Below the pieces are notes generated by a model. That model was not told where the DNA came from and did not search any database. It worked only from the letters and a program-made list of their open reading frames with translations. This document shows, one piece after another, positions 1,046 to 39,944 of a stretch of DNA of 40,785 bases; position 1 is the first letter of the stretch, and the number at the start of each line of letters is the position of its first letter. The position numbers were made by a program, and so were the translations under genes. Source of the stretch: Octopus bimaculoides (taxonomy: Eukaryota); contig NC_068997.1 of the NCBI RefSeq assembly GCF_001194135.2, positions 48,630,309 to 48,671,093 on the forward strand. The letters run 5' to 3'.

Positions 1046-2021
1046 AGTAACATACACACAAATATGTGTGCGTGTGTATATGTACGTATACAAGTAGAGG
1101 AAGAGATTTATGTATATGCATATACATCNNNNNNNNNNNNNNNNNNNNNNNNNNNNNNNNNNNNNNNNNNNNNNNNNNNNNNNNNNNNNNNNNNNNNNNN
1201 NNNNNNNNNNNNNNNNNNNNNNNNNNNNNNNNNNNNNNNNNNNNNNNNNNNNNNNNNNNNNNNNNNNNNNNNNNNNNNNNNNNNNNNNNNNNNNNNNNNN
1301 NNNNNNNNNNNNNNNNNNNNNNNNNNNNNNNNNNNNNNNNNNNNNNNNNNNNNNNNNNNNNNNNNNNNNNNNNNNNNNNNNNNNNNNNNNNNNNNNNNNN
1401 NNNNNNNNNNNNNNNNNNNNNNNNNNNNNNNNNNNNNNNNNNNNNNNNNNNNNNNNNNNNNNNNNNNNNNNNNNNNNNNNNNNNNNNNNNNNNNNNNNNN
1501 NNNNNNNNNNNNNNNNNNNNNNNNNNNNNNNNNNNNNNNNNNNNNNNNNNNNNNNNNNNNNNNNNNNNNNNNNNNNNNNNNNNNNNNNNNNNNNNNNNNN
1601 NNNNNNNNNNNNNNNNNNNNNNNNNNNNNNNNNNNNNNNNNNNNNNNNNNNNNNNNNNNNNNNNNNNNNNNNNNNNNNNNNNNNNNNNNNNNNNNNNNNN
1701 NNNNNNNNNNNNNNNNNNNNNNNNNNNNNNNNNNNNNNNNNNNNNNNNNNNNNNNNNNNNNNNNNNNNNNNNNNNNNNNNNNNNNNNNNNNNNNNNNNNN
1801 NNNNNNNNNNNNNNNNNNNNNNNNNNNNNNNNNNNNNNNNNNNNNNNNNNNNNNNNNNNNNNNNNNNNNNNNNNNNNNNNNNNNNNNNNNNNNNNNNNNN
1901 NNNNNNNNNNNNNNNNNNNNNNNNNNNNNNNNNNNNNNNNNNNNNNNNNNNNNNNNNNNNNNNNNNNNNNNNNNNNNNNNNNNNNNNNNNNNNNNNNNNN
2001 NNNNNNNNNNNNNNNNNNNNN

Positions 2022-2295: not shown

Positions 2296-3478
2296 TCAAA
2301 TTTCGCTGATTTCGATTTTGCCTTCCTACTTTCGAGGTGAATGAAACAAACACAACTTCAACCCAGAGTTCGATTGACTATGCCCCGCCCACCAAATTGC
2401 CTATTGTAGAAAATATATAATGATAACATTTGATTGGTAGTTGCGGATCACTTGGCTGAGAATTGTTGTGGTATCAATCAGTTCCTTTAATATTTAATAT
2501 TTAATATTTTACTTGTTTCAGCCATTAGACTGCGACCATGCTGGAGTACAGTTTTGCAGTGTTTTAACTGAGCAAATCAACTCCAGTACTTTTAAATCTG
2601 ATATTCATTCTAACAAACTCGCCGAATCGCTATTTACGGGACGTAAACAAACCAACGCTAGTTATCAAGAGGTGGCGGGTACAGTATCATGCTGCGTTTG
2701 TTCCGGTTCTCTGCGCTTTGGGTTCAAATCATGGCCCGGTGAAATTTGTCTTTCTTTTCTTCGAGGTCGATAAACTATAGTACGACTCGAGTACTGGTGC
2801 CGATTCAATCGATGAACCATTCCCCGGATTCTCAGCTTCCAACTTATGATAGAAATTAGTATTCTAACATTTGTTTACAACGCCTTACGATAATTTTTCC
2901 GGTTCTTTGCGCTCTAGATTCAATTCCCACGAAATCACCATTGTGTGTTATGATTCCGGGGGTCGATAGTTGAAGTACCAGCCAAGTACTGAGCTCCGTT
3001 CTATATCATTATTCGTATCCAGCTACATTCTGCTGTGAGAAAGGCCACGAGGACTCAGTCACAGCGTATTTTCTCCAGAAATGGTGATGGTTTGGCGATG
3101 AATCAAGTAAGCACATCTTATGGAAAACCCAATATTTTACTGAAACGACGAGGGACAGAAATAAAGAACAGGTGGGGGTAATTTGACGGAAAGTTGGCTG
3201 ATATTTCTTGCAGATTGAGCGGCCATGTACAAACTCCCTGGTTTTCTCAGTATTCAACGAAAAAAATGAAAGAACTTCTAGCTTGTCACCCGATTTGCTG
3301 GAAATAACTGCCAAATCTCCATTAAATTCCGTCAAACTAGTGTCTTCATAAAGTACAGGTAGCATGATACCAGGTTCATTGCTCATAGGAAACCTATGTC
3401 ATGGTTACGAGCGGGAAACCTTTGTTCATAAATGTTTTTCATTACAGTTGACCCGGACATAAACAACAACAACAACAC

Positions 3479-3527
<49 letters not shown>

Positions 3528-3529
3528 TT

Positions 3530-3598
<69 letters not shown>

Positions 3599-3840
3599 GT
3601 GTGACAATATGTGCATTGTATGTTGTAGTAGTAGTTGTTATCGTCGTTGTCGTACTGTTATCATTTAGTTTCAGATCCAGTTTGGTGGAGCAAGACCTCT
3701 GTATGTACACAAGTCACCCATTCCATTCACGAGCAGTGATTCCGACCATTTGTCTATCCAGGAACCTCTTTGACGACAAATCGAATCCGACTCTTAACCT
3801 CTTCCTTATGTCGTCCGTAGCGGTAATCAAAAGCAGGCGA

Positions 3841-4088
3841 AATGAATGCTAGCCTTTATATAATCCTCTGTAATGAATGCTAATAATTACAATACTTCGT
3901 GCAATCAATACTAGTTTTTACAATATCGTCTGCAATGAATGCTAGTCTTTATAATACCTACAGCAATGAATGCTAGCATATAAAGTTCCCGTCGCAATGA
4001 ATGCTTATCTTTACAGTACTGAATGAAATGAATGCTTTCGTTTACAGCATCCACTTCAATGAATGCTTGCACTATATTTTTTAGATCG
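3841..4088. repeat. Array of 8 units of exactly 31 bp, each starting with AATGAATGCT (one variant) followed by a divergent 21-bp segment
   Basis: Motif starts at 3841, 3872, 3903 (AATCAATACT), 3934, 3965, 3996, 4027 and 4058. Confidence 0.95.
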
Positions 4089-5118
4089 GTATTGTGCCAT
4101 TGAAACATGATATATTTCATAAGGTTAAAACCTCTTTAGGTTTCGAATGCATGCTTTGTACTTAAGATGAAATGTTGACAACAATTACAATAACAACTTA
4201 TTCTCAGTGAAGACAACAATTAAAATAAAACCCAATAATAAGCAATTCATAATTACATCCCATATAATTATATTTAACGGCCAACAGGTCCCTGAAGTAA
4301 AATTGCTGTCGATAGCCTAAACGCTTTATGATATTCAGTTAGTATTAATAGTATTAATATTTTACTTTTAATCTTATTATTTTAAGTTGAATGTTTTCCG
4401 TTTTGTTTTAAATGAATCATGGCTCACGATTTAATCACCTATTTCCCGATATCTTGAGTGTATATGCCCTCTATTACTGGTTGTTGTTTTCATCCATCCA
4501 TATTCATGAGTTGAAAGACAACGACAACCGTAATCACCACCACTACCACCATTACAACAAAAATTACAATAAAGTCAGTAAATCGAAGGAGAAATGACAA
4601 AAAAAAACAAGCTAACAATGTCATAATAAAATGTCGACAATAACAACAAATGATAAAACAAATCAATGATTGCAACTAAAAATAAATAAATAAATAAACC
4701 GACAATCATAAAACTTTAATTATAAGTACAACAACGACAACAAGAATTATAAGTACAACAACGACAGCAATAACAAGGAGACCAACGGTCATTGGAAATA
4801 AGACAGATAGACAAATATAAGCAGACGCATAACTCCGAAAGAAAAAAAATCATCATAAACCAATAAATAAAATAAAATAAAAGAGGTAATATACAAATAT
4901 TACGTTAGAGATATCATGTTTTGTATTTCAATAAATACAGACGACAGGATGATATCAAGTTTTGGATTTCAATAAATATGGACGACATATTTGTTAATCT
5001 AACGGCAAACACCCATTTACGTTCGTGCTTAGCGTTATGTATGTGACTCAGTGTTTGTTTGTATTTGTGCGTGTGTGTGTGAATTGTGTGTATTGTGTAA
5101 ACAAGTATACATATTTAA

Positions 5119-6882: not shown

Positions 6883-7302
6883 NNNNNNNNNNNNNNNNNN
6901 NNNNNNNNNNNNNNNNNNNNNNNNNNNNNNNNNNNNNNNNNNNNNNNNNNNNNNNNNNNNNNNNNNNNNNNNNNNNNNNNNNNNNNNNNNNNNNNNNNNN
7001 NNNNNNNNNNNNNNNNNNNNNNNNNNNNNNNNNNNNNNNNNNNNNNNNNNNNNNNNNNNNNNNNNNNNNNNNNNNNNNNNNNNNNNNNNNNNNNNNNNNN
7101 NNNNNNNNNNNNNNNNNNNNNNNNNNNNNNNNNNNNNNNNNNNNNNNNNNNNNNNNNNNNNNNNNNNNNNNNNNNNNNNNNNNNNNNNNNNNNNNNNNNN
7201 NNNNNNNNNNNNNNNNNNNNNCACTTCCCTCAAATTTCGGGCCTTGTGCCTAGAATAGAAAATTATATATGTGTATGTGTGTGTTTGTGTGTGTGTATGT
7301 GT

Positions 7303-9020: not shown

Positions 9021-10684
9021 ATATATATATACATACATACATACATACATACATACATACATACATACATACATACATACACGTGTACGTCAGTATGAAT
9101 TTACACATACATACAGATTTAAGAATGGGGTGATGGGTCATCGCAGTTATCCTATTACGATTCGTATTAATCATGGAAATGAAGCTAAATATTTGCAGTG
9201 AGAAATATAAACCTTTATTGCCATTTCACCGAAAACAATCACGGAAATGATGAGGGATCAATTATGAATCGATTTTATATCACAGACCTAAATCCACTAA
9301 GCCCTTTTCTCTATGACAAGTATTATTTTTTGTCAATTAAGAAAAAAACATCCTTTAGCAGATGTCATTGATTATTCAAGCTGCTGATTAGAATGCGTTT
9401 CTACATGAGTGTCAGTAATTGGTAATGTCTTGGAATATTTCATAAAGACGACGTCGGATTTAGGGATGGTATTCAATGGCCGACGAGTTTATATAGCGAC
9501 AGTTTTCCTGCTTCCGGCATCCTGTTACGTTTTTATGACTTTAGAGAAGACACGTAACTCTGTTTGCCTTCAGTTTGATTTTCGGATCAAGAAATATGTG
9601 AACACTGAAATTTTCATAAACACTCTCTTTTTACTCTTTTACTCTTTTACTTGTTTCGGTCATCTGACTGCGGCTATGCTGGAGCACCACCTTTAGTCGA
9701 GTAAATCGACCCCAGGACTTAAAGCTTGTCTGTATTAATAAGAGTTTTCCATCTGCCATATCGTTTGTCACTTACTTGGCCATAAGTTGGGTTAACCATT
9801 GGATAACATTGAAATCACAAGTATTATCCCAAATTTTTCCTCCTTCTAGATCTATGTCTAAACAAAGACTAGGGGTCTTTCACTCCCAGCTGTTGGATGA
9901 CCATTGATTTTATTGAGTTCGTTTGCCCTTCGTACTGCAGGGTCAGGGTGTTCAATAAAATCTATCCTCCTTACTAAACGGACTTCGTAACAGCCCGACC
10001 CAGGGAACACGTTGTACTGGGTCGCATGTTAGCAACAGTGCTAAGTGATCTAACTTACATATATACATGCACAATCGGAAACATACATACATGCCTGCGT
10101 TCATACATACATACATACGTACATATCTGCATACATACTATACGCATTCATTCAAACACGTGTTTGTTTTGTGCGTGGATGAGAGAGGGAACATTCTGAC
10201 ACACACGCATGCATCTATGTATCCATACTGGCATACATGTATGCTCTCATATATGCATCGATGCACACATTCACAAATATGTTTCATTATCTGCTTACAT
10301 CCCTGTCATACGTAGTTTGGTAGCAAAATGAGAACTTATTAATTATTCTAACAGCTTTCTTAAAATCCACAAAGACAAATTATATTGGAACAAACAGTGG
10401 AACTCTGAATTTCTCTAAATACCAAACGCACCGCTGTTCTAAGAGACAAAGGATTATGTTTAGCAACAGTTAGGCATAAATGAAGGATTTCATTGACATA
10501 TTTCTCGAGAATCATTATCGGTAGCCTAGCAACAGCTATGCATTTGTAGCATCATTAAAATTCGATTTAATTACATGTATGTATGTTTGCATGAAGTATT
10601 GTATGTATGGATGTATTTGTGTGTGTGTCAATGTACATTAGCATGGTGTATGTAGACATATACACACACATATTTACCTATGCT

Positions 10685-10946: not shown

Positions 10947-11341
10947 TATATATATATATAATTACTTGGAAGTTACAAAAAAACAATATATATATACATA
11001 TATATATATATGTGTGTATGTGTATCAAAAGGATGTATTACAATACTATTTCACATATACAAAAACAGCCATACCAACAATCCAACGTGCCTCCATCATC
11101 AGCTGTCCAACGGATACCATCATGGTTTCGACACCCTGGACAGTACCATTCAATCCGGTGGTTTCAACAGCACGAAAATAAGTGTTGTTTGAGAACATAT
11201 ATATATATTCTTTTCTTTTATTCGTATATTCTTTTAGTTGTTTCAGGCATTTGACTGTGTCCATGTTGGCGTACCGCCTTTAGAGGAAAATCCAATAGAA
11301 AGTAAGACGGAGGAAGTAAATTCGTCAATGATTCACGTGGT

Positions 11342-12556
11342 TAGACATGACAGAAGTAAAAAAGACACCCTAAAAATCATTAAAATTTATTTAAAACTTA
11401 AATTATACATTCAAATTGTTTATTAATCCTTATAATGTGAATATTTAATATTTACTAGACATGCCCTTTGCATTTTTCAATGCAAGGACTCTATTAGGCA
11501 TGTTACTGATCAGATGACGAATATTCTCTTGCGGAATTTTTGCCAAGTTTAGTGCAGTAATTTCAAATGCTTTCTTGTTCTTTTTATGATGTGTCCTGTC
11601 CATTATGTCTCAGAAGTGTTCAATAGGGTTCATATCTGGTGACTGGTTTGACCTTTGAAGCTTTTTAATGTCATTCTCATCCAACAAATCTTGGGTCATT
11701 TTAGCCGTATGACAAGGAGCCACGTCTTTCATAAATAGTCTTCTTTAATCATTTCACCACGGGAGAAGATTGATAGGAGTCCTTTCTGCAATATGGACAC
11801 ATATTTCTTTGAGTTTATGTTTCCGTCACACTCCACCAGCTCTGATCAATCTTTGCTCCAAATTGCTCCCAAGACCATAAAAAATTAGCTATCGTGTTTC
11901 ATTGCTAGCTCAAAATCTTGATCACAGCCTCCAGAACCACACCCGACCACTGTCAGGAAATGTAGCAAATCTGGAGTCCTCAGAGAATATGACAGTGTCC
12001 CAAAATGCTAGTCGCTTCTCCACCATCTCACTGACCTAATCTTTTTTCCGTTAGATGCTGGTTAGTCGAAGAAGTGGTTTCCTTCTTGCTGCTCTGCCAG
12101 AGTAACCAAGTTTGTGGAGATACCTGACAACTGTTCTGGGACTGACATCAACTTGCTCTGTTACGTCACGTGCCTTGCAACGAGGATTATCCTCCACCCT
12201 TCTCTTATCAAAGGGAAAGGTCCTGTCAGAGGGCCCTAGTTGACCTGGGTGAGGTGATGTAGACGCCTTCTCTCTGGTGAATTGCACAGTCACTCTATCA
12301 ACTGTAAAAAGCGAAATCCCAAGGTTTTCTGCGATTTCACGCTGACTATGTCCACCTTCAGAATGAACCACAATACGGCCTCTTTGAAATTCAGGCAGTT
12401 CCAAGACTTCTTTTGTACATGGCATGCTTATACGGTCATATATAGAACCTGAAACATTAAAAAAATGTCAATTAATAAGAAGTATAAACCATTACAAGTT
12501 AGAATAAACATAAAACGATGTTTTTATGGGCTGTCTATTAATTTCTGGCATGTCTG
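11342..12556 (-). mobile_element. Near-full-length decayed Tc1-family transposon (DD34E)
   Basis: Transposase remnant 12425 to 11445: HTH N-terminus ([22 protein letters not shown]), [16 protein letters not shown] and MKDVAPCH-(34 aa)-NPIEHF, with several stops. Degenerate TIRs agacatg.cagaa.t.aa..gaca at 11342 and inverted ending at 12556. Confidence 0.88.
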
Positions 12557-13194
12557 TGTGTTTGTACGTATATATATATGTATACAGACACATACACACA
12601 CACATATATACACATATACATATATATATATATGTATGTTTGTATGTGTCTATAAATATATATATATATATATATANNNNNNNNNNNNNNNNNNNNNNNN
12701 NNNNNNNNNNNNNNNNNNNNNNNNNNNNNNNNNNNNNNNNNNNNNNNACAATTAACAATTTTTACCAAGCCCATCGGTATGAAAGCACCATTATTGGTGG
12801 AGAACTTATTTAAAAGCTCATATATATTTATAAATATAATTAAGGGATCAGCAAATATTTGCTTCACCATATACCGAAGTTCAGAAATAGCAGCTAAAAA
12901 AGCTGAGAATCCCACAGATAGCATACATATATATATATATGTGTGTGTGTATGTGTGTATGTGTGTATGTGTATGTGTGTATGTGTGTATGTGTGTAGAT
13001 ACATCTGTGTTTTTTCTTTTACTTTTTTCAGTCACCTGACTGAGGCCATGCTAGGGCACCACCTTATAGAATTCTTCGAATGAGTCGAACTTAGTACTTA
13101 TTTTTGTTAAATCTGGCACTTATCCTATTGGTATCTATTGCCGAGCCGTTTGGTTACAAGGACGTAAACACACCAACGCCGGTTGCATATGACC

Positions 13195-17033: not shown

Positions 17034-17399
17034 TGTTGTTATTGTTGGCACTCCGTAGCTTACGACGTCGAGGGTTCCAGTTGATCCGATCAACGAAACA
17101 GCCTGCTCGTGAAATTAACGTGCAAGTGGCTGAGCACTCCACAGACACGTGTACCTTTAACGTAGTTTTCGGGGATATTCAGCGTGACACAGTGTGACAA
17201 GGCTGACCCTTTGAATTACAGGCACAACAGAAACAGGAAGTAAGAGTGAGAGAAAGTTGTGGTGAAAGAGTACAGCAGGGTTCGCCACCATCCCCTGCCG
17301 GAGCCTCGTGGAGCTTTAGGTGTTTTCGCTCAATAAATACTCACAACGCCCGGTCTGGGAATCGAAACCGCGATCCTATGACCGCGAGTCCGCCTCCAC
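17034..17399 (-). mobile_element. tRNA-derived SINE, family A (about 390 bp), with a 25-bp deletion in the head
   Basis: Homologous to 30021-30391 and 31888-32277. Flanked by a probable TSD, attaattaataat (17021-17033) and attaattcataat (17400-17412). Confidence 0.9.
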
Positions 17400-18997: not shown

Positions 18998-19870
18998 ATT
19001 ATATTCTTGGGAATAGAAATTTCCCTTACGAATTTTTTTACACACTGGCTTCTTGATAANNNNNNNNNNNNNNNNNNNNNNNNNNNNNNNNNNNNNNNNN
19101 NNNNNNNNNNNNNNNNNNNNNNNNNNNNNNNNNNNNNNNNNNNNNNNNNNNNNNNNNNNNNNNNNNNNNNNNNNNNNNNNNNNNNNNNNNNNNNNNNNNN
19201 NNNNNNNNNNNNNNNNNNNNNNNNNNNNNNNNNNNNNNNNNNNNNNNNNNNNNNNNNNNNNNNNNNNNNNNNNNNNNNNNNNNNNNNNNNNNNNNNNNNN
19301 NNNNNNNNNNNNNNNNNNNNNNNNNNNNNNNNNNNNNNNNNNNNNNNNNNNNNNNNNNNNNNNNNNNNNNNNNNNNNNNNNNNNNNNNNNNNNNNNNNNN
19401 NNNNNNNNNNNNNNNNNNNNNNNNNNNNNNNNNNNNNNNNNNNNNNNNNNNNNNNNNNNNNNNNNNNNNNNNNNNNNNNNNNNNNNNNNNNNNNNNNNNN
19501 NNNNNNNNNNNNNNNNNNNNNNNNNNNNNNNNNNNNNNNNNNNNNNNNNNNNNNNNNNNNNNNNNNNNNNNNNNNNNNNNNNNNNNNNNNNNNNNNNNNN
19601 NNNNNNNNNNNNNNNNNNNNNNNNNNNNNNNNNNNNNNNNNNNNNNNNNNNNNNNNNNNNNNNNNNNNNNNNNNNNNNNNNNNNNNNNNNNNNNNNNNNN
19701 NNNNNNNNNNNNNNNNNNNNNNNNNNNNNNNNNNNNNNNNNGTGTGTAAGTTTATTCGTACCAAATTTGATAGCTTAAAAAACTCGTTTTCATATTAGAC
19801 GCACCCCTGTTTCAGCAGCAGATATTATTCCGTCAAATGTAAAGCTTATGAATTCACACTATTTTAAACT

Positions 19871-20088
19871 TGTTGTTGGCACTCCGTCGCATACGACGTC
19901 GAGGGTTCCAGTTGATCCGATCAACGGAACAGCCTGCTCGTGAAATTAACGTGCAAGTGGCTGAGCACTCCACAGACACGTGTACCCTTAACGTAGTTCT
20001 CGGAGATATTCAGCGTGACACAGTGTGACAAGACTGACCCTTTGAATTACGGGTACAACAGAAACAGGAAGTAAGAGTGAGAGAAAGT
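19871..20088 (-). mobile_element. 5'-truncated SINE family A copy
   Basis: Matches the 3' half of family A copies and ends in the same caacaac tail. Confidence 0.88.
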
Positions 20089-21162: not shown

Positions 21163-22544
21163 GTTGTGTTTTGAAGAGAGTGAGCGTGTTCAAACATTGT
21201 TACTTGGAAGTCGTTTTATTATGTTTTTTAACACCTAGTCAAGGGGGCAAGGCAATACTGTTGATCCTTTACAGAGCCCCTGAGACTGGTATGAGGGACG
21301 TAAGGAGAAGGTTATCCTCAAACCGGAGACCTTACTCGAACGCATCCAAACTGTGGATTCTGTTAAAATCATTCAAAATATTAAACGGCAACTAATGGAG
21401 TCTACTGGGCGAGTGTCTCCACTTAAGGAGAGAAATAATATTTCTGCGAGCTGAAGTGAACTACTGCTATGTTTAGTGGACGAGTATCCCTCACCGAGGA
21501 TGACCATAAAGAGATCGAAACCGTACGGTCTGGTGGTCTCCGGGATAAAATAGTAGGGAGTTCCCGCGCTGCTTGCAATATATATCGAGTGCAGAGTGCA
21601 TTGATTAGCTACTAGAAGGAAGTGGCCTCTTGGGGTTAAAATAACAGAATCGTCGGTTCCTGGGGAACACATGTGTTTAGGTGGCATTAAACACTGCTTT
21701 TGAGGATAAATAGAGATTTTCTAAATTAACTAGTTTGTTTGTTAATATTTTTCCTTTCTTTTAGAGGATTCGGGGTATATTTCGTGTTGAAACATTTGAC
21801 TATTTAGCCATCTGACCTTCAGGAGGTCACAATAAAATATGTTGTGAGACGTTTTTGTATATTTTATTGTGCAAACATTCAATTTTTTTGTGCATGTGTA
21901 ACGCATGTATCGATACGTATACCTCCCCTGGATTACCCAATTACACACCCCTTTGTAATTTTAATGTGTCGGTGAATATGCACTAAGGTAAAACTTCTGA
22001 CAAACAAGAAGGAAGAAAAATGACTCTATTTATGCAAAAAGGATACAAATAGTTACACGCAAAACAAATTAAGTTTTCACAAAACAGTTTCGACCAACTG
22101 ACGTCGTAACAAGCTATTCCGGATATAGGCAAAAGAGAATACGAGATATGTATATTGCGAAATGTGCTTCATTGCATGAAGCCTTTTTAGTTTTTTTTTT
22201 TTACCGCAGGTAGATAAGGTCGCAGGTGTGAGTGTGTGATAAAACGTTTGCTTACTAACCATATGGTTGCAGGTTCAGACTCACAACGTGGCATCTTGGG
22301 CAAGTGTCTTCGATTGTAGTCTCAACCCCACCAAAGCTTTGTGAGTGGATTTGGTAGATGGAAACTAAAAGATGCCTATCGTATANNNNNNNNNNNNNNN
22401 NNNNNNNNNNNNNNNNNNNNNNNNNNNNNNNNNNNNNNNNNNNNNNNNNNNNNNNNNNNNNNNNNNNNNNNNNNNNNNNNNNNNNNNNNNNNNNNNNNNN
22501 NNNNNNNNNNNNNNNNNNNNNNNNNNNNNNNNNNNNNNNNNNNN

Positions 22545-22591
<47 letters not shown>

Positions 22592-23056
22592 TATTTGTCC
22601 CCGACCGCTGTTTGATAGCAGGTGTATTGATGTTCTTTTTACTGCTAGCTGCCACGTCTAATAATTCGAATAACACCTTATAAAAGTCATATGTTGAATC
22701 TTGATAATAAAAAAAGTGTTCACATGATGTCATTCAGGATGTTAACAAGTTAATGTCACTTTGCCTTTTCAGTACTGAATACAGAAGGAAAAAAATCAGG
22801 ATATTTTAACTTAAAATACCAGTTTGAACAATGAGAATTTCAACAATATCGTCTTTTACTTCTCTCAATCACTGGAATGCAGCCATGCTGGAGCACTACC
22901 TTGAAGGTTTAATTCGAACAAATCGCAACCAAGATTTATTTTTTTTTAAAATCTGGTGCTTTTGCTATTGGGTCTTTTGACACGTCTCCGTTAGGTGGAT
23001 ATGAAAAAGATAGTAAAAGACCGTCAAGCAGTGTCGGGTATGTGTAACAAACCCAA

Positions 23057-23111
<55 letters not shown>

Positions 23112-23335
23112 NNNNNNNNNNNNNNNNNNNNNNNNNNNNNNNNNNNNNNNNNNNNNNNNNNNNNNNNNNNNNNNNNNNNNNNNNNNNNNNNNNNNNNNNN
23201 NNNNNNNNNNNNNNNNNNNNNNNNNNNNNNNNNNNNNNNNNNNNNNNNNNNNNNNNNNNNNNNNNNNNNNNNNNNNNNNNNNNNNNNNNNNNNNNNNNNN
23301 NNNNNNNNNNNNNNNNNNNNNNNNNNNNNNNNNNN

Positions 23336-23725: not shown

Positions 23726-24030
23726 TACAGAGTTGGACAAAATAATGGAAATACCTTAAAATTTCAAACAAATTTATTTTAATATGAGGTAGGACCACCT
23801 TTAGCAGTAATTACAGCTTGAATTCTACGAGGTATGGACTTGTACAAAATTTGAATTGTTTCCAAAGGAATTTTTGTCCATTCTTCAGCTAAAACAGTCT
23901 CCAGTTCTTGTAGTGATGATGGTGGAGGATATCGACTCCTTACTTTTTTTTTTTTAAATGCACCATAAATGTTCAATGATATTGAGATCTGGGGATTGTG
24001 GTGGCCAGATAAGATGTTCAACTTCGCTTT
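23726..24030 (-). mobile_element. Tc1-family transposon 3' fragment with one TIR
   Basis: The minus strand encodes a frameshifted WPPQSPDLNIIEHL-like segment, then KVRSRYPPPSSLQELETVLAEEWTKIPLETIQILYKSIPRRIQAVITAKGGPTSY. The terminus is TA-CAGAGTTGGACAAAATAATGG at 23726. Confidence 0.88.
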
Positions 24031-24123
24031 TTGTTGATATGCTGTGACGTAGTTCATTTGACAGAAAGTTGATTTATGACTTAAAGCAGCTCTAGTATAT
24101 GCCTGTCTGCCTGCCTGCCTGCC

Positions 24124-24168
<45 letters not shown>

Positions 24169-24248
24169 GCTTGCCTGACTGCCTGATTGCATGTTTGTGT
24201 ATCTGACTGTCTTTCTGTCTGTCTGTCCCTCCCTCCCTCTCTCTCTCT

Positions 24249-24314
<66 letters not shown>

Positions 24315-26924: not shown

Positions 26925-27018
26925 GATCTACTTAATGCCTGACGAACGGCGCTATTTACAGTCGAAACTGAGAAAAAAAACCTGTAACCCAAAATTTGAA
27001 GAAAGCTACATATTCCAG
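26925..27018 (+). CDS. SYT15: Synaptotagmin-15-like internal exon, C2A domain (phase 2 start, phase 0 end)
   Basis: ttttcacAG acceptor and CAG|GTatc donor. The 94 nt encode (R)IYLMPDERRYLQSKLRKKTCNPKFEESYIFQ, which resembles vertebrate SYT15 C2A as I recall it (LPDERRFLQSK..RKT.NP.F.E.FIFQ). Confidence 0.9.
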
Positions 27019-27267
27019 GTATCAAATGATCTCGTTCTTTGTCTCGAAAATAAATTTTTCCATTCAACATTTTGATTGTCATCATTTTGAAAATTTTAAT
27101 TGTCAATTAGAATTTTTGAACTGAAATTCAAAAATTAAAATAGTTTTCCCCGTGTTGGCGCGAACATGAGCGTGTGGTTAAAATGCTCACTTTGAAACCA
27201 TGTGGTTCTCGGTTCAGATTCACTGCATTGCACCTTAGGCATGCGTCTTCTCTTATAGCCCCGGGCC

Positions 27268-28454: not shown

Positions 28455-28586
28455 ATAGAATAAGTACTAGGCTTACAAAGAATACGTCCTGGGGTCGATT
28501 TCTTCGACTAAAGGCGGTGCGCAAGCATGGCCGCAGTCAAATGACTGAAACAAGTAAAATAATAAAATAATAAAATAATAATAATA

Positions 28587-30020: not shown

Positions 30021-30391
30021 GTGGAGGCGCAATGGCCCAGTGGTTAGGGTAGCGGACTCGCGGTCATAGGATCGCGGTTTCGATTCCCAGACCGGGCGTT
30101 GTGAGTGTTTATTGAGCGAAAAACACCTAAAGCTCCACGAGGCTCCGGCAGGGCGATGGTGGCGAACCCTGCTGTATTCTTTCACCACAACTTTCTCTCA
30201 CTCTTTCTTCCTGTTTCTGTTGTACCTGTAATTCAAAGGGTCAGCCTTGTCACACTGTGTCACGCTGAATATCCCCGAGAACTGCGTTAAGGGTACACAT
30301 GTCCGTGGAGTGCTCAGCCACTTGCACGTTAATTTCACGAGCAGGCTGTTCCGTTGATCGGATCAACTGGAACCCTCGACGTCGTAAGCGA
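30021..30391 (+). mobile_element. SINE family A copy with intact tRNA-like head
   Basis: A-box-like TGGCCCAGTGG and B-box-like GGTTTCGATTCCC. The body matches three other copies in the window. Confidence 0.92.
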
Positions 30392-30723
30392 TGCAGGGCC
30401 TACAATTATATCTTGCGGATGACTTCTACAAAGAATGAAATGATTCATGCATTTTTACCTAAAACCATCGTACTAAAATAAGTCCGATAAATATCTACAT
30501 TCAGTTCATCTTTATTCTCAGTTTAAAATAGAAACACGTAATTCCGCCAAATATTTGGGCGAACTGATTATTTTCCGTGTAGTAACTGTCCCCAAAAGGA
30601 CCCCACTTCTTATTTATTTATCAACAGATTATTTGCAAAGTCAACTACAGTCCAGCGAATTTCTTTTCATTTCTGCTCTGCTGGTGTTGAAAACCGTAAA
30701 TTTATTATCCAATTCCATTGCAG

Positions 30724-30894
30724 GTATCGCACAAATCTTTTGATGATCGAATTCTGAAGTTCACCATGTTTGATGTGGATCGTCACCGACGTCATAATGT
30801 AATTGGACACGCATTGTTCCCGCTCAAAGAATATGATTGCGAGAATAACGAGAGAATGGTTATTTGGCGGGACCTCGAGAAAGAAGTGTCAGAG
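30724..30894 (+). CDS. SYT15: Synaptotagmin-15-like internal exon, second half of C2A (phase 0-0)
   Basis: ttgcAG acceptor and GAG|GTtaga donor. The 171 nt encode VSHKSFDDRILKFTMFDVDRHRRHNVIGHALFPLKEYDCENNERMVIWRDLEKEVSE, in frame with the previous exon and with C2 motifs (DVDR..HNVIG, WRDL). Confidence 0.92.
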
Positions 30895-31268: not shown

Positions 31269-31285
31269 TCCACCTCCGACAAAGG
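31269..31285 (+). CDS. SYT15: Synaptotagmin-15-like exon, only the 5' end visible (linker and start of C2B); the rest lies in gap 31286-31513
   Basis: Strong acceptor ttttttttctttttgcAG, then TCC ACC TCC GAC AAA GG (STSDKG), then Ns. A phase 0 to phase 1 exon is needed here to join 30894 to 33809 in frame. Confidence 0.7.
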
Positions 31286-31513
31286 NNNNNNNNNNNNNNN
31301 NNNNNNNNNNNNNNNNNNNNNNNNNNNNNNNNNNNNNNNNNNNNNNNNNNNNNNNNNNNNNNNNNNNNNNNNNNNNNNNNNNNNNNNNNNNNNNNNNNNN
31401 NNNNNNNNNNNNNNNNNNNNNNNNNNNNNNNNNNNNNNNNNNNNNNNNNNNNNNNNNNNNNNNNNNNNNNNNNNNNNNNNNNNNNNNNNNNNNNNNNNNN
31501 NNNNNNNNNNNNN
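31286..31513. other. Assembly gap (one of nine: 1129-2021, 6883-7221, 12677-12747, 19060-19741, 22386-22544, 23112-23335, 31286-31513, 36103-36834, 39088-39917)
   Basis: N runs. Confidence 1.
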
Positions 31514-33808: not shown

Positions 33809-33991
33809 ATTCCTATGTGAAAGTGTGTCTCTTAATTCAGAACAAGATTGTCAAATCGAAAAAAACTGCGATTGTGAAGCGAACTATCGACCCGAACTTT
33901 AGCGAGTCTTTCACTTTTAAGCTCTCTTCATCGTCACTTGATACGGCAAGCATAAGTGTTAGCACTATGCAACATTTCACCGGTGCTAAAG
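33809..33991 (+). CDS. SYT15: Synaptotagmin-15-like internal exon, C2B core (phase 1-1)
   Basis: attttcAG acceptor and AAAG|GTtagt donor. The 183 nt encode (D)SYVKVCLLIQNKIVKSKKTAIVKRTIDPNFSESFTFKLSSSSLDTASISVSTMQHFTGAK, a typical C2B with a polybasic patch and P.F.E.F.F motif. Confidence 0.93.
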
Positions 33992-34690: not shown

Positions 34691-35063
34691 CATAAGAGTT
34701 TGGTCCAATGATTTACATTCTAAGTTCAATTCCCACCGAGGTAAATACTTTTTTTTTGTTATCCTTTCGTAGTTGATTAAACAAAGTACCAGACAAATAC
34801 TGGGGTCAATAATGTCTTTCCATCAAAAAATTCCTGGCCCCATAACTAAATCAGAAACCATTATCTTATATGCTTTATCATTTACTTGTTTTTAGTAATT
34901 ACACTGTGGCCACGCTGGGGCACAGCATTGAAGAACTTTTAGACAAATGAATCGGCTCCTGTAATTACTACGTTTAAAACCTGGTACTTATTTAATCGGG
35001 CTCTTTTGTCGAATCACTATATATTTAAAATATTCACCCATTTTTCTTTTTCTGTCTTTGCAG

Positions 35064-35188
35064 ACAAAATGATCGGCCGAGTGGTCCTTGGATCTTTCAT
35101 GTTCGCTCGTGGTCGGGAGCTGGACCACTGGAATGAAATGTTGAGCAGTCAACGGGATCAAATCAGTTACTGGCACTCGCTCACCTAA
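35064..35188 (+). CDS. SYT15: Synaptotagmin-15-like last coding exon
   Basis: Polypyrimidine tract and ttgcAG acceptor. Encodes (D)KMIGRVVLGSFMFARGRELDHWNEMLSSQRDQISYWHSLT with TAA at 35186-35188. GRELxHWxEML and WHxL match the SYT15 C-terminus as I recall it. Confidence 0.92.
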
Positions 35189-35790: not shown

Positions 35791-37472
35791 GCATACATTA
35801 ACGATGATGATTATAATAACGAAGTAAAATTTTAAAAAAAAATCATAATAATAACAACAACATCAGCAAAAACAATTATAAGGATAAACGTAACAACAAC
35901 AAAAAACTTGTAGTATTAGTGCACTGAAGCAATAGCGATGATGATGATGATGATGTAATAGATAAAATTACAAGCATCTAATATAATTATCTTAGCAACG
36001 GCGTTACAGCTACGTTATAGCAAAACGCACAATATACGCAGTATTACACAAACAAACGAACAAATGCTTAACGATGCACACACACACACACACACACACA
36101 CANNNNNNNNNNNNNNNNNNNNNNNNNNNNNNNNNNNNNNNNNNNNNNNNNNNNNNNNNNNNNNNNNNNNNNNNNNNNNNNNNNNNNNNNNNNNNNNNNN
36201 NNNNNNNNNNNNNNNNNNNNNNNNNNNNNNNNNNNNNNNNNNNNNNNNNNNNNNNNNNNNNNNNNNNNNNNNNNNNNNNNNNNNNNNNNNNNNNNNNNNN
36301 NNNNNNNNNNNNNNNNNNNNNNNNNNNNNNNNNNNNNNNNNNNNNNNNNNNNNNNNNNNNNNNNNNNNNNNNNNNNNNNNNNNNNNNNNNNNNNNNNNNN
36401 NNNNNNNNNNNNNNNNNNNNNNNNNNNNNNNNNNNNNNNNNNNNNNNNNNNNNNNNNNNNNNNNNNNNNNNNNNNNNNNNNNNNNNNNNNNNNNNNNNNN
36501 NNNNNNNNNNNNNNNNNNNNNNNNNNNNNNNNNNNNNNNNNNNNNNNNNNNNNNNNNNNNNNNNNNNNNNNNNNNNNNNNNNNNNNNNNNNNNNNNNNNN
36601 NNNNNNNNNNNNNNNNNNNNNNNNNNNNNNNNNNNNNNNNNNNNNNNNNNNNNNNNNNNNNNNNNNNNNNNNNNNNNNNNNNNNNNNNNNNNNNNNNNNN
36701 NNNNNNNNNNNNNNNNNNNNNNNNNNNNNNNNNNNNNNNNNNNNNNNNNNNNNNNNNNNNNNNNNNNNNNNNNNNNNNNNNNNNNNNNNNNNNNNNNNNN
36801 NNNNNNNNNNNNNNNNNNNNNNNNNNNNNNNNNNTATATTTGTGTGTGTGTGTAGAAGGTTGTAAAGTAACACCCGAGTTGATATATATAAGGAAAATAG
36901 GACAAGGTAGAAAATGTTAAAATAATTTTATCATGAAGAGCATTTTAGTGCCGGTTTGTCTTTGTGACTTTTTCAACTTAGAGTAAAGCATAAAAGCAAT
37001 TGAATTGAGGAAAAGTTAAATTTTTTTATTTATTTATTTATTTATTTATTTTTGGGGTATTTCCAGAGTTTTCAAATGCATCGGACATTTCCCTTTTTTC
37101 TGTTGCTCTCTGTTTTACTTTTGTGAAGGATCGCTAGGTAAGTAGTAGCAGATCTGAAGGAATATCTAATACGAGAAATGTGGGTTCTTGGTTTTGAATG
37201 TTTAAGCAGCAGTAGCGGAGGAAGGAGACGGCGAACAAGAAGAAGAAGAAGAAGAAGAAGAAGAAGAAGAAGAAGAAGATAGAGAGAGAGAGAATAAAAA
37301 AATACAGGAGTGGTATGACAGTAGTCGTTTGTTGGTGAAGTTCTTTTTTAATGGTCAAGTGACCTAAAAGTGACCTGTTGTGGTTATAGTAGTAGCGATA
37401 GGAATTGTTCTGTTCTGAATATATCGTTAGTAATATTTGCGTGGGTATTATTCTAAGGCCTTTGTAGTAGTG

Positions 37473-39087: not shown

Positions 39088-39944
39088 NNNNNNNNNNNNN
39101 NNNNNNNNNNNNNNNNNNNNNNNNNNNNNNNNNNNNNNNNNNNNNNNNNNNNNNNNNNNNNNNNNNNNNNNNNNNNNNNNNNNNNNNNNNNNNNNNNNNN
39201 NNNNNNNNNNNNNNNNNNNNNNNNNNNNNNNNNNNNNNNNNNNNNNNNNNNNNNNNNNNNNNNNNNNNNNNNNNNNNNNNNNNNNNNNNNNNNNNNNNNN
39301 NNNNNNNNNNNNNNNNNNNNNNNNNNNNNNNNNNNNNNNNNNNNNNNNNNNNNNNNNNNNNNNNNNNNNNNNNNNNNNNNNNNNNNNNNNNNNNNNNNNN
39401 NNNNNNNNNNNNNNNNNNNNNNNNNNNNNNNNNNNNNNNNNNNNNNNNNNNNNNNNNNNNNNNNNNNNNNNNNNNNNNNNNNNNNNNNNNNNNNNNNNNN
39501 NNNNNNNNNNNNNNNNNNNNNNNNNNNNNNNNNNNNNNNNNNNNNNNNNNNNNNNNNNNNNNNNNNNNNNNNNNNNNNNNNNNNNNNNNNNNNNNNNNNN
39601 NNNNNNNNNNNNNNNNNNNNNNNNNNNNNNNNNNNNNNNNNNNNNNNNNNNNNNNNNNNNNNNNNNNNNNNNNNNNNNNNNNNNNNNNNNNNNNNNNNNN
39701 NNNNNNNNNNNNNNNNNNNNNNNNNNNNNNNNNNNNNNNNNNNNNNNNNNNNNNNNNNNNNNNNNNNNNNNNNNNNNNNNNNNNNNNNNNNNNNNNNNNN
39801 NNNNNNNNNNNNNNNNNNNNNNNNNNNNNNNNNNNNNNNNNNNNNNNNNNNNNNNNNNNNNNNNNNNNNNNNNNNNNNNNNNNNNNNNNNNNNNNNNNNN
39901 NNNNNNNNNNNNNNNNNATATATATATATATACAATATATCTCA

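What the first reader, a model, noticed from the sequence alone, without database searches (positions are those of the whole stretch)
3841..4088. Strictly phased 31-bp array with a near-invariant 10-mer and variable 21-bp spacers
Seen: AATGAATGCT recurs eight times at an exact 31-bp period with no indels (7 perfect, 1 AATCAATACT). The spacers are agcctttatataatcctctgt, aataattacaatacttcgtgc, agtttttacaatatcgtctgc, agtctttataatacctacagc, agcatataaagttcccgtcgc, tatctttacagtactgaatga, ttcgtttacagcatccacttc and tgcactatattttttagatcg. They are weakly related (TA at positions 7-8 in seven of eight), so the array probably arose by tandem duplication. Yet the spacers have diverged heavily while the motif and spacing have not, which is not how neutral minisatellites usually decay. 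An off-phase variant AATGCATGCT sits at 4146. The period of 31 is not a multiple of 3 and is about three helical turns, putting each motif on the same DNA face. Inference: a phased homotypic protein-binding array. TGAATG resembles CIC/HBP1-class HMG-box sites (TGAATGAA at 4020-4027 and TCAATGAA at 4056-4063 are present). As RNA, GAAUG resembles a TDP-43-type site. A small-RNA-producing array is also conceivable.
Basis: partly seen in the sequence, partly recalled or inferred. Interest (0 to 1): 0.72.

Follow-up and report, generated by a model that had tools for sequence, protein, structure and literature searches.

The report
Phased 31-bp motif array in octopus
In non-coding Octopus bimaculoides DNA upstream of (or in an intron of) a synaptotagmin-15-like gene, a 10-base word recurs eight times exactly 31 bases apart while the sequence between copies has drifted, which suggests a row of protein-binding sites kept by selection, though neither its binder nor its origin (host element or mobile element) could be determined here.

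Summary
AATGAATGCT sits at 3841, 3872, 3934, 3965, 3996, 4027 and 4058, with AATCAATACT at 3903, all in exact 31-bp phase. There is no other exact copy in the 40.8-kb window.

The array is seven related units plus a terminal motif. Spacers 0-6 are 53% identical pairwise, so they share an origin; the eighth spacer is unrelated. The most parsimonious tree needs at least 38 substitutions in the 21 spacer columns but only 2 in the 10 motif columns (Poisson P about 2.5e-6, or 8e-5 after correcting for 31 registers). Neutral-decay simulations never reproduced this. No indel has broken the phase.

Tests found:
- no RNA structure or Rfam family
- no coding remnant
- no terminal inverted repeats
- no A-tract curvature
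- no second copy in the window
- no homologue in the public collections I could reach

The window is Octopus bimaculoides. The array lies about 23 kb upstream of the first visible exon of a synaptotagmin-15-like gene, on the same strand.

Best reading: a constraint-maintained, helically phased cluster of binding sites, resembling the Su(Hw) array of gypsy. Whether the constraint acted in the host locus or in a repeat family is unresolved, because no octopus genome could be searched. The CIC/HMG-box assignment is not supported.

The parts
3841..4067 (+). The whole array: (10-bp motif + 21-bp spacer) x 7, closed by an eighth motif. Exact 31-bp period, no indels.
3841..3850 (+). Motif copy 1, AATGAATGCT (perfect). 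The array starts abruptly here; the preceding 31 bp show no similarity to a unit.
3872..3881 (+). Motif copy 2, perfect
3903..3912 (+). Motif copy 3, AATCAATACT. This is the only degenerate copy; both G's of the AATG-AATG half-repeats are changed.
3934..3943 (+). Motif copy 4, perfect
3965..3974 (+). Motif copy 5, perfect
3996..4005 (+). Motif copy 6, perfect
4027..4036 (+). Motif copy 7, perfect
4058..4067 (+). Motif copy 8, perfect. It is the terminal copy; the 21 bp after it (4068-4088) are unrelated to the other spacers (3-7 of 21 matches).
3855..3863 (+). First instance of a semi-conserved second box (unit columns 15-23, consensus TTTAYAnTA). It recurs every 31 bp in units 0-6. Columns 17, 18 and 20 are invariant in those seven units.
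4046..4057 (-). Imperfect inverted copy of the motif inside spacer 7 (AGCATCCACTTC against the reverse complement of GAAATGAATGCT). It gives a local 13-bp hairpin in the minus-strand fold. Single occurrence.
4143..4165 (+). Possible decayed, out-of-phase relic unit (tcgAATGCATGCTTTGTAC). It resembles units 6-8, which also have T after the motif. It lies 88 bp after the last in-phase motif.
   Evidence: similarity judged by eye

Best explanation
The array is an old, short tandem array. It began as copies of one 31-bp unit. Since then its 10-12-bp core ((G)nAATGAATGCT(W)) and its exact 31-bp spacing, about three turns of the DNA helix, have been held by purifying selection while the 21-bp linkers drifted.

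The most economical mechanism is a homotypic cluster of eight sites for one sequence-specific DNA-binding protein. The sites sit on roughly the same face of the helix, so bound molecules can contact each other or a common partner. Such a cluster could act as an enhancer, silencer or insulator-like module. It lies in the 5' flank or an intron of a synaptotagmin-15-like gene of Octopus bimaculoides.

**Shown:** the array, its common origin, the rate contrast between motif and spacer, the lack of indels, and the genomic context.

**Inferred:** selection, binding at the DNA level, cooperativity, and any regulatory effect.
For: - **Phase and identity.** Exact phase and 7 of 8 perfect motifs.
- **Common origin.** Spacers 0-6 are 53% identical against a 28% composition expectation, so the units are homologous and not independently placed.
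- **Rate contrast.** At least 38 substitutions in 21 spacer columns against 2 in 10 motif columns, and both of those fall in one unit (P = 2.5e-6, or 8e-5 corrected). None of 10,807 comparably diverged neutral simulations reached the observed block conservation.
- **No indels.** Seven spacers carry at least 38 substitutions but no indel. At the usual animal ratio of about 0.1-0.2 indels per substitution (general knowledge), 4-8 indels would be expected.
- **Alternatives that predict other features are not seen.** No RNA structure, no Rfam or tRNA hit, no protein-domain remnant in any frame of 2960-5100, no flanking terminal inverted repeats of 12 bp or more, and no further copy in the window.
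Against: - No binding protein is identified. The motif matches no consensus I could verify, and the CIC octamer fails.
- No orthologue, chromatin, expression or population data could be obtained, so selection is inferred from one sequence only.
- The array was picked post hoc from a scan, which weakens the P values.
- I found no helical A-tract phasing or curvature signal within the unit.
- At 10.5 bp per turn, 31 bp is 2.95 turns, so the sites drift about 120 degrees around the helix across the array.
- The same data fit a constraint that acted in a mobile-element family before insertion.
Confidence: 0.38

Rival explanations
1. The array is an internal or subterminal part of a dispersed repeat, such as a non-autonomous DNA transposon, a Helitron-like element, or the untranslated region of a retroelement. 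The conserved word would be a binding site that the element family needs (for a transposase, a promoter or an insulator). The variable spacers would already belong to the family consensus, and this copy would be a young, functionally inert insertion.
For: - The genome is repeat-rich. SINE copies and Tc1-like transposase remnants lie in the same window.
- Many mobile elements carry arrays of short binding motifs. The gypsy Su(Hw) array sits in a transposon 5' UTR, and Drosophila Foldback elements contain 31-bp repeats (from memory).
- A young insertion would explain why the motifs are almost untouched.
- Microsatellite-like complementary arms flank a 1.07-kb segment holding the array (3621-3656 and 4725-4760, 78% complementary).
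- A strongly A-rich tract follows at 4500-4900 (AT skew about 0.5).
Against: - There is no second copy of the array or its flanks in 36.6 kb of non-gap sequence.
- No non-low-complexity terminal inverted repeat of 12 bp or more, and no target-site duplication, brackets the array.
- No transposase, reverse-transcriptase or other domain remnant occurs in six frames of 2960-5100.
- The only inverted arms are trinucleotide-repeat debris, which is abundant in this genome.
- A 40-kb window has little power to detect a moderately repeated family.
Confidence: 0.3
2. The array works at the RNA level. It would be transcribed as part of the synaptotagmin-15-like pre-mRNA or of a non-coding RNA. The repeated AAUGAAUGCU (or AGCAUUCAUU on the other strand) would recruit many copies of an RNA-binding protein, soak up a microRNA, or give rise to phased small RNAs about 31 nt long.
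For: - The motif has the same orientation as the downstream gene, whose 5' exons must lie further upstream. The array is therefore plausibly intronic and transcribed.
- Conserved short cores with free spacers are known from Xist A-repeats and CDR1as (general knowledge).
- 31 nt is close to piRNA length.
Against: - Strict spacing is not needed for RNA-binding-protein or microRNA sites.
- There is no stable or unusual RNA fold (z = +0.34 and -1.05) and no Rfam hit.
- ATGAATGC is listed as a 'Non-seed kmer' control in the octopus microRNA study. No other register of the motif was found in the supplementary files held, though those files are incomplete.
- No expression data are available.
Confidence: 0.12
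3. The array is a functionless decaying minisatellite. The intact motif would reflect chance plus uneven mutation or repair. For example, slippage or short-tract conversion seeded on the (AATG)2-like word could keep re-copying it.
For: - The array begins and ends with the motif, the usual footprint of slippage between short direct repeats.
- The motif is itself a dimer of AATG.
- Unrelated, ordinary 31-bp minisatellites containing the same 10-mer exist in metagenomes (L009/L010/L019, L011, L007/L016/L017).
- The case was selected post hoc.
Against: - Uniform neutral decay is rejected.
- Known homogenisation mechanisms copy whole units, which would also homogenise the spacers. No pair of spacers is more than 71% identical.
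- The lack of indels is also unexpected under neutral decay.
- The metagenome arrays, unlike this one, have near-identical whole units.
Confidence: 0.15

Closest known systems
Su(Hw) binding-site array of the Drosophila gypsy retrotransposon (the 'gypsy insulator')
   Same: Both are a few hundred bp long and hold about ten copies of a 10-12-bp word in one orientation. The copies are separated by short AT-rich linkers that vary in sequence. The gypsy array has 12 sites in 340 bp, a mean period of about 28 bp (PMC2374998).
   Different: - The words are unrelated (YRYTGCATAYYY against AATGAATGCT).
- Gypsy linkers vary in length, whereas here the spacing is exactly 31 bp.
- The gypsy array lies in a recognisable LTR element, and no element is recognisable here.
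- Binding and insulation are demonstrated for gypsy and untested here.
Phased origin or partition repeats: plasmid iterons and the family of repeats of Epstein-Barr virus oriP (from memory: 20 x 30 bp, each with an EBNA1 site)
   Same: Both are strictly periodic arrays of one protein's site at about 2-3 helical turns, and the spacing matters for cooperative binding.
   Different: - Those arrays have nearly identical whole units and sit next to replication genes in plasmids or viruses.
- Here the spacers are about 50% diverged and the context is octopus chromosomal non-coding DNA. No coding remnant is nearby.
Drosophila Foldback (FB) element arms (from memory: built of 10-, 20- and 31-bp tandem repeats)
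   Same: Both have a 31-bp period, are non-coding, and consist of tandem units with a conserved sub-motif.
   Different: FB arms are long inverted repeats with homogeneous units. Here there is no inverted partner array in the window and the units are highly diverged.
RNA repeat modules with a conserved core and free spacers (Xist A-repeat, CDR1as/ciRS-7)
   Same: Both have about 8 or more copies of a short conserved core of tandem-duplication origin, with spacers free to drift.
   Different: - Spacer lengths vary in those RNAs.
- Their cores are structured (Xist) or are microRNA seed matches (CDR1as).
- Neither structure nor a seed match was found here.
Satellite monomers with a protected protein box (the CENP-B box in alpha satellite; general knowledge)
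   Same: Both have a short protein-binding box preserved in monomers that otherwise differ by tens of percent.
   Different: Alpha satellite forms megabase arrays of 171-bp monomers at centromeres. This is a single 227-bp array in a gene region.

Membership tests
Ordinary (neutral) minisatellite | Head-to-tail copies of one unit, with common descent of the units | tested here: met
   Seven units are in register and spacers are 53% identical against 28% expected. TRF reports period 31.
Ordinary (neutral) minisatellite | Divergence spread evenly over the unit, and indels accumulating along with substitutions | tested here: not met
   There are 2 changes in 10 motif columns against at least 38 in 21 spacer columns, and no indels.
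TIR DNA transposon / MITE / Foldback element with subterminal repeats | Terminal inverted repeats and a target-site duplication bracketing the repeats; for Foldback elements, an inverted partner array | tested here: not met
   No arm of 12 bp or more that is not low-complexity was found. The only arms are trinucleotide-repeat-like (3621-3656 and 4725-4760, 78%). There is no inverted array.
Any dispersed repeat family | Multiple copies in the genome with the same internal pattern | not testable with these tools
   There is no second copy in this window, and no octopus genome could be searched.
Insulator-type homotypic site cluster (gypsy Su(Hw)-like) | Many same-orientation copies of one 10-12-bp word separated by short AT-rich variable linkers | tested here: met
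   spacers are 65% A+T. Architecture compared with PMC2374998.
Insulator-type homotypic site cluster (gypsy Su(Hw)-like) | The Su(Hw) consensus YRYTGCATAYYY, and demonstrated protein binding or enhancer blocking | tested here: not met
   The word is different. Binding and insulation cannot be tested with these tools.
   TGAATGCT fails positions 7-8. The in-register NNAATGAA has the first T in 1 of 8 units. Only two incidental perfect octamers exist, at 4020 and 4056.
CRISPR-like repeat-spacer array | Repeats of 23 bp or more, unrelated spacers, a prokaryotic context and cas genes | tested here: not met
   The repeat is 10 bp, the spacers are homologous to one another, and the host is an octopus.
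Structured RNA / known RNA family | A fold more stable than shuffled sequence, or a match to an Rfam model | tested here: not met
   z = +0.34 (plus strand) and -1.05 (minus strand). No Rfam match at gathering score, and nothing in the array at E up to 10. No tRNA.
microRNA sponge | The repeated word is the seed match of an expressed microRNA | tested here: inconclusive
   ATGAATGC is listed as a 'Non-seed kmer' in Data S2 of PMC9699675. No other register was found, but the held files are truncated and the miRNA list itself is not held.
Protein-coding repeat | A period divisible by 3 or a 93-bp higher-order repeat, an open frame, and homologues | tested here: not met
   31 is not a multiple of 3 and there is no lag-3 signal. 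The 69-aa minus-strand ORF has no Pfam hit and no homologue.

The most novel reading that the evidence does not exclude
The array is a host cis-regulatory or architectural element peculiar to octopods. Eight helically phased sites for one still unknown sequence-specific factor (for instance one of the greatly expanded octopus C2H2 zinc-finger proteins) would be kept by selection on both word and spacing, inside the intron or 5' region of a neuronal synaptotagmin-15-like gene. It would be a single-copy analogue of the gypsy insulator that arose in place by tandem duplication.
Probability: 0.25. Interest if true: 0.6.

Novelty: new member of a known kind. Interest (0 to 1): 0.42.

Why it matters
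Cis-regulatory grammar in cephalopods is almost unknown. A short array in which both the word and the helical phase are protected would be an unusually clean, experimentally tractable entry point. The word could serve as bait for a protein pull-down from octopus tissue, and the phase can be broken by 5-bp insertions in reporter constructs.

If the block turns out to be part of a repeat family, it would define the binding module of an octopus mobile element. That is useful for repeat annotation but ordinary.

The case also shows that standard tandem-repeat finders largely miss this class. TRF saw only 2.9 of the 8 units.

Tried and rejected
- **Finding the same locus or relatives through called ORFs.** Exact look-ups of the 69-aa ORF through the array and of the 125-aa ORF at 3009-3386 found nothing. 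Homologue searches with both also found nothing.
- **Pattern scans with motif-N21-motif.** I scanned metagenome, viral and GTDB contigs. All hits were either single chance pairs or ordinary homogeneous 31-bp minisatellites with an unrelated remainder of the unit. None is a homologue.
- **Reaching orthologous introns through the neighbouring gene.** The O. bimaculoides protein has no contig on record. The closest relative is known only from short transcript contigs.
- **A protein-like 44-aa reading just upstream (3717-3848, minus strand).** Its only hits are bacterial proteins with many copies of an FDL-Y-RFLDLQKAE repeat (E = 4e-6, summed over repeats). I judged this spurious.
- **93-bp higher-order repeat or coding repeat.** Rejected.
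- **Intrinsic curvature from A-tracts phased at 10.3 bp.** No signal.
- **Terminal inverted repeats and target-site duplications.** None found.
- **Transposable-element protein remnants.** None found.
- **CpG-island-like patch upstream of the array.** CpG observed/expected is 1.0-1.3 against a window median of 0.84, which is not exceptional.
- **Literature search for the 10-mer.** Only unrelated primers and similar sequences turned up.
- **CRISPR-like, iteron or integrated-replicon readings.** Rejected on context and on the homology among spacers.

Full report
**What is there.** Reading 3400-4600 directly and searching for the word confirm the finding to the base. AATGAATGCT starts at 3841, 3872, 3934, 3965, 3996, 4027 and 4058, and AATCAATACT at 3903. 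Every start-to-start distance is 31 bp. No other exact copy exists in the 40,785-bp window. Matches with up to two mismatches are at chance level overall (65 against 64.7 expected from shuffles). A scan for any 8-mer recurring four or more times at a fixed period found only this array apart from microsatellites. Tandem Repeats Finder reports just 2.9 copies at 3887-3976, so the array is cryptic to standard tools.

**Anatomy.** Laid out in register, the ten motif columns carry 2 deviating cells out of 80, both in unit 3. The 21 spacer columns average 46% pairwise identity.

The last spacer (4068-4088) matches the others at only 3-7 of 21 positions, which is the random level. The array is therefore seven units plus a closing motif, 3841-4067. 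Spacers 0-6 are 53% identical against 28% expected from their composition, so they descend from one unit.

Similarity does not rise at lag 3 (10.1, 10.7 and 10.2 matches at lags 1-3). There is therefore no 93-bp higher-order repeat, and no hidden 31-codon repeat.

Conservation spills slightly beyond the word: G at -2 in 7 of 8 units and A/T at +11. A second box, TTTAYAnTA (columns 15-23), is semi-conserved, with columns 17, 18 and 20 invariant in units 0-6.

AATGCATGCT at 4146, with the TTTGTAC that follows it, looks like a decayed out-of-phase relic unit. One spacer holds an imperfect inverted copy of the word (4046-4057).

**Is it more than chance?**
- I simulated arrays of eight 31-bp units growing by random duplication and decaying uniformly. 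Among 10,807 arrays whose remaining columns were as diverged as observed, the best 10-column block reached at most 75 of 80 matching cells (99th percentile 71 or lower). The observed value is 78.
- A tree-aware count avoids counting inherited changes twice. Over all 945 trees for units 0-6, the most parsimonious needs 38 substitutions in the spacer columns and 2 in the motif columns. At the spacer rate 18 would be expected in the motif. Poisson P = 2.5e-6, or 8e-5 after allowing for 31 possible registers. This is conservative because parsimony ignores multiple hits.
- No indel has occurred in seven spacers that took at least 38 substitutions. With the usual 0.1-0.2 indels per substitution in animal non-coding DNA (general knowledge), several would be expected.
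- Caveat: the array was noticed because it looks like this, and I do not know how many windows were scanned.

**Context.** The window is animal DNA rich in microsatellites, with nine assembly gaps. Four exons on the plus strand (26935-27024, 30718-30894, 33838-33990 and 35048-35185) match the Octopus bimaculoides protein A0A0L8HDE2 at 98-100% outside splice junctions. That protein has a C2 domain and its relatives are named synaptotagmin-15.

Transcript contigs from a related octopod show that the reading frame continues upstream of the first visible exon (…NSNGCDPFVRIYL|MPDERRY). The window has a splice acceptor there. No further 5' exon is detectable in 1-26,900.

The array lies 23 kb upstream and in the same orientation. 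It is therefore either in a large intron or in the 5' flank of this gene.

Close by are an old SINE copy (about 2486-3000), (AAC)5(CTA)40 at 3462-3598, and an A-rich tract at 4500-4900.

**What it is not.**
- *Not a structured RNA.* There is no Rfam family at gathering score anywhere in the window and nothing within the array at E up to 10. There is no tRNA. Neither strand folds better than shuffles (z = +0.34 and -1.05).
- *Not coding.* The minus strand is open for 69 codons through six units only because AGCATTCATT has no stop in any frame. That ORF, the neighbouring ORFs and all six frames of 2960-5100 have no Pfam match and no homologue.
- *No recognisable transposon.* No non-low-complexity inverted repeat of 12 bp or more brackets the array and no target-site duplication is present. 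The only complementary arms (3621-3656 and 4725-4760, 78%) are trinucleotide-repeat debris.
- *No second copy in the window.* Neither the array nor its flanks recur, by BLAST or by a profile of the unit.
- *No curvature signal.* A-tracts within the unit are not phased at 10.3 bp.
- *Not a CIC-site cluster.* The word is not the CIC octamer.

**Outside evidence.** I could not reach any cephalopod genome. Scans of metagenome, viral and prokaryotic contigs with motif-N21-motif returned 21 loci. All are either single chance pairs or ordinary minisatellites of period 31 whose whole units are nearly identical and whose remainder is unrelated to the octopus spacers. They show that this word in a 31-bp repeat can arise independently. 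They also show what a young, unconstrained array looks like: the opposite of the pattern here.

**Mechanism.** The data require something that protects both a 10-12-bp word and its spacing. I think the most likely explanation is a homotypic cluster of sites for one DNA-binding protein at about three helical turns, allowing side-by-side cooperative occupancy.

The closest described architecture is the Su(Hw) array of gypsy. [quoted passage not shown] That array is carried by a mobile element. This points to the main unresolved question: did selection act in this octopus locus (confidence about 0.38) or in a repeat family before insertion (about 0.30)? A genome-wide BLAST would settle it in minutes.

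RNA-level roles (about 0.12) fit the likely intronic position but do not need strict spacing, and they found no support. A functionless minisatellite with a mutational quirk (about 0.15) is disfavoured by the statistics and by the lack of any known process that would re-copy ten bases but not their neighbours.

**Verdict.** This is a real, statistically unusual feature and a plausible binding-site array. It is a new example of a known kind of architecture, not a new kind of system. Interest is moderate until copy number and orthologues are checked.

Noticed in passing
window 26935-27024, 30718-30894, 33838-33990, 35048-35185 (+): Four exons of a synaptotagmin-15-like, two-C2-domain gene. They match Octopus bimaculoides A0A0L8HDE2 at 98-100% and identify the organism. 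The reading frame continues upstream of 26935 through a splice acceptor, so more 5' exons exist.
   Followed up: yes
window 31269-31513: The exon that encodes the start of the second C2 domain (STSDKGEIYIALSYNSHLERL… in a related octopod transcript) begins at 31269-31286 and runs into the assembly gap 31286-31513. This explains why the public 176-aa O. bimaculoides model lacks about 50 residues.
   Followed up: partly
window 2486-3000 (-); also 9638-9687, 11232-11274, 22854-22896, 28524-28566: Copies of an abundant SINE-like repeat (…TTTCAGCCATTAGACTGCGACCATGCTGGAG…). From memory I recognise it as the common octopus SINE. Its tails carry AAT/ATG/AGA trinucleotide runs.
   Followed up: partly
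window 17041-17295 (+), 19873-20088 (+), 30152-30406 (-): Three copies, 94% alike, of another roughly 250-bp dispersed repeat. Not classified.
   Followed up: no
window 12051-12425 (-) and 23779-24312 (-): Remnants of Tc1-like transposases. The first has Pfam HTH_23 and HTH_Tnp_Tc3_2. The second has no significant Pfam match; it was recognised by eye as a Tc1-type C-terminal part fused to microsatellite-derived sequence.
   Followed up: partly
window 3462-3657 and 4725-4760: (AAC)5(CTA)40 is followed 23 bp later by its own inverted junction, (GTA)3GTTGTT… This makes a microsatellite palindrome. A complementary AAC/GAC-rich stretch lies 1.07 kb downstream. It could be a fold-back rearrangement, an assembly artefact or chance.
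   Followed up: partly
window 4500-4900: A 400-bp tract that is strongly A-rich on the plus strand (AT skew about 0.5). It contains a 27-bp x 2 tandem repeat at 4718-4770. It may be a decayed retroposon tail.
   Followed up: no
L009 1343-1650, L010 1450-1800, L019 1-186; L011 3859-3961; L007 978-1049 (with L016 and L017): Unrelated metagenome contigs carry homogeneous 31-bp minisatellites that happen to contain AATGAATGCT, for example AATGAATGCTACAACGAACGATGCTATAAC. They serve as a contrast, showing whole-unit identity.
   Followed up: yes
window 3717-3848 (-): A 44-aa stop-to-stop reading (…DDIRKRLRVGFDLSSKRFLDRQMVG…) scores E = 4e-6 against giant bacterial sensor proteins with many FDL-Y-RFLDLQKAE repeats. 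I judged it a repeat-inflated chance match.
   Followed up: yes
window 1129-2021, 6883-7221, 12677-12747, 19060-19741, 22386-22544, 23112-23335, 31286-31513, 36103-36834, 39088-39917: Nine assembly gaps. Those whose edges were read abut dinucleotide microsatellites. About 10% of the window is unknown sequence.
   Followed up: no
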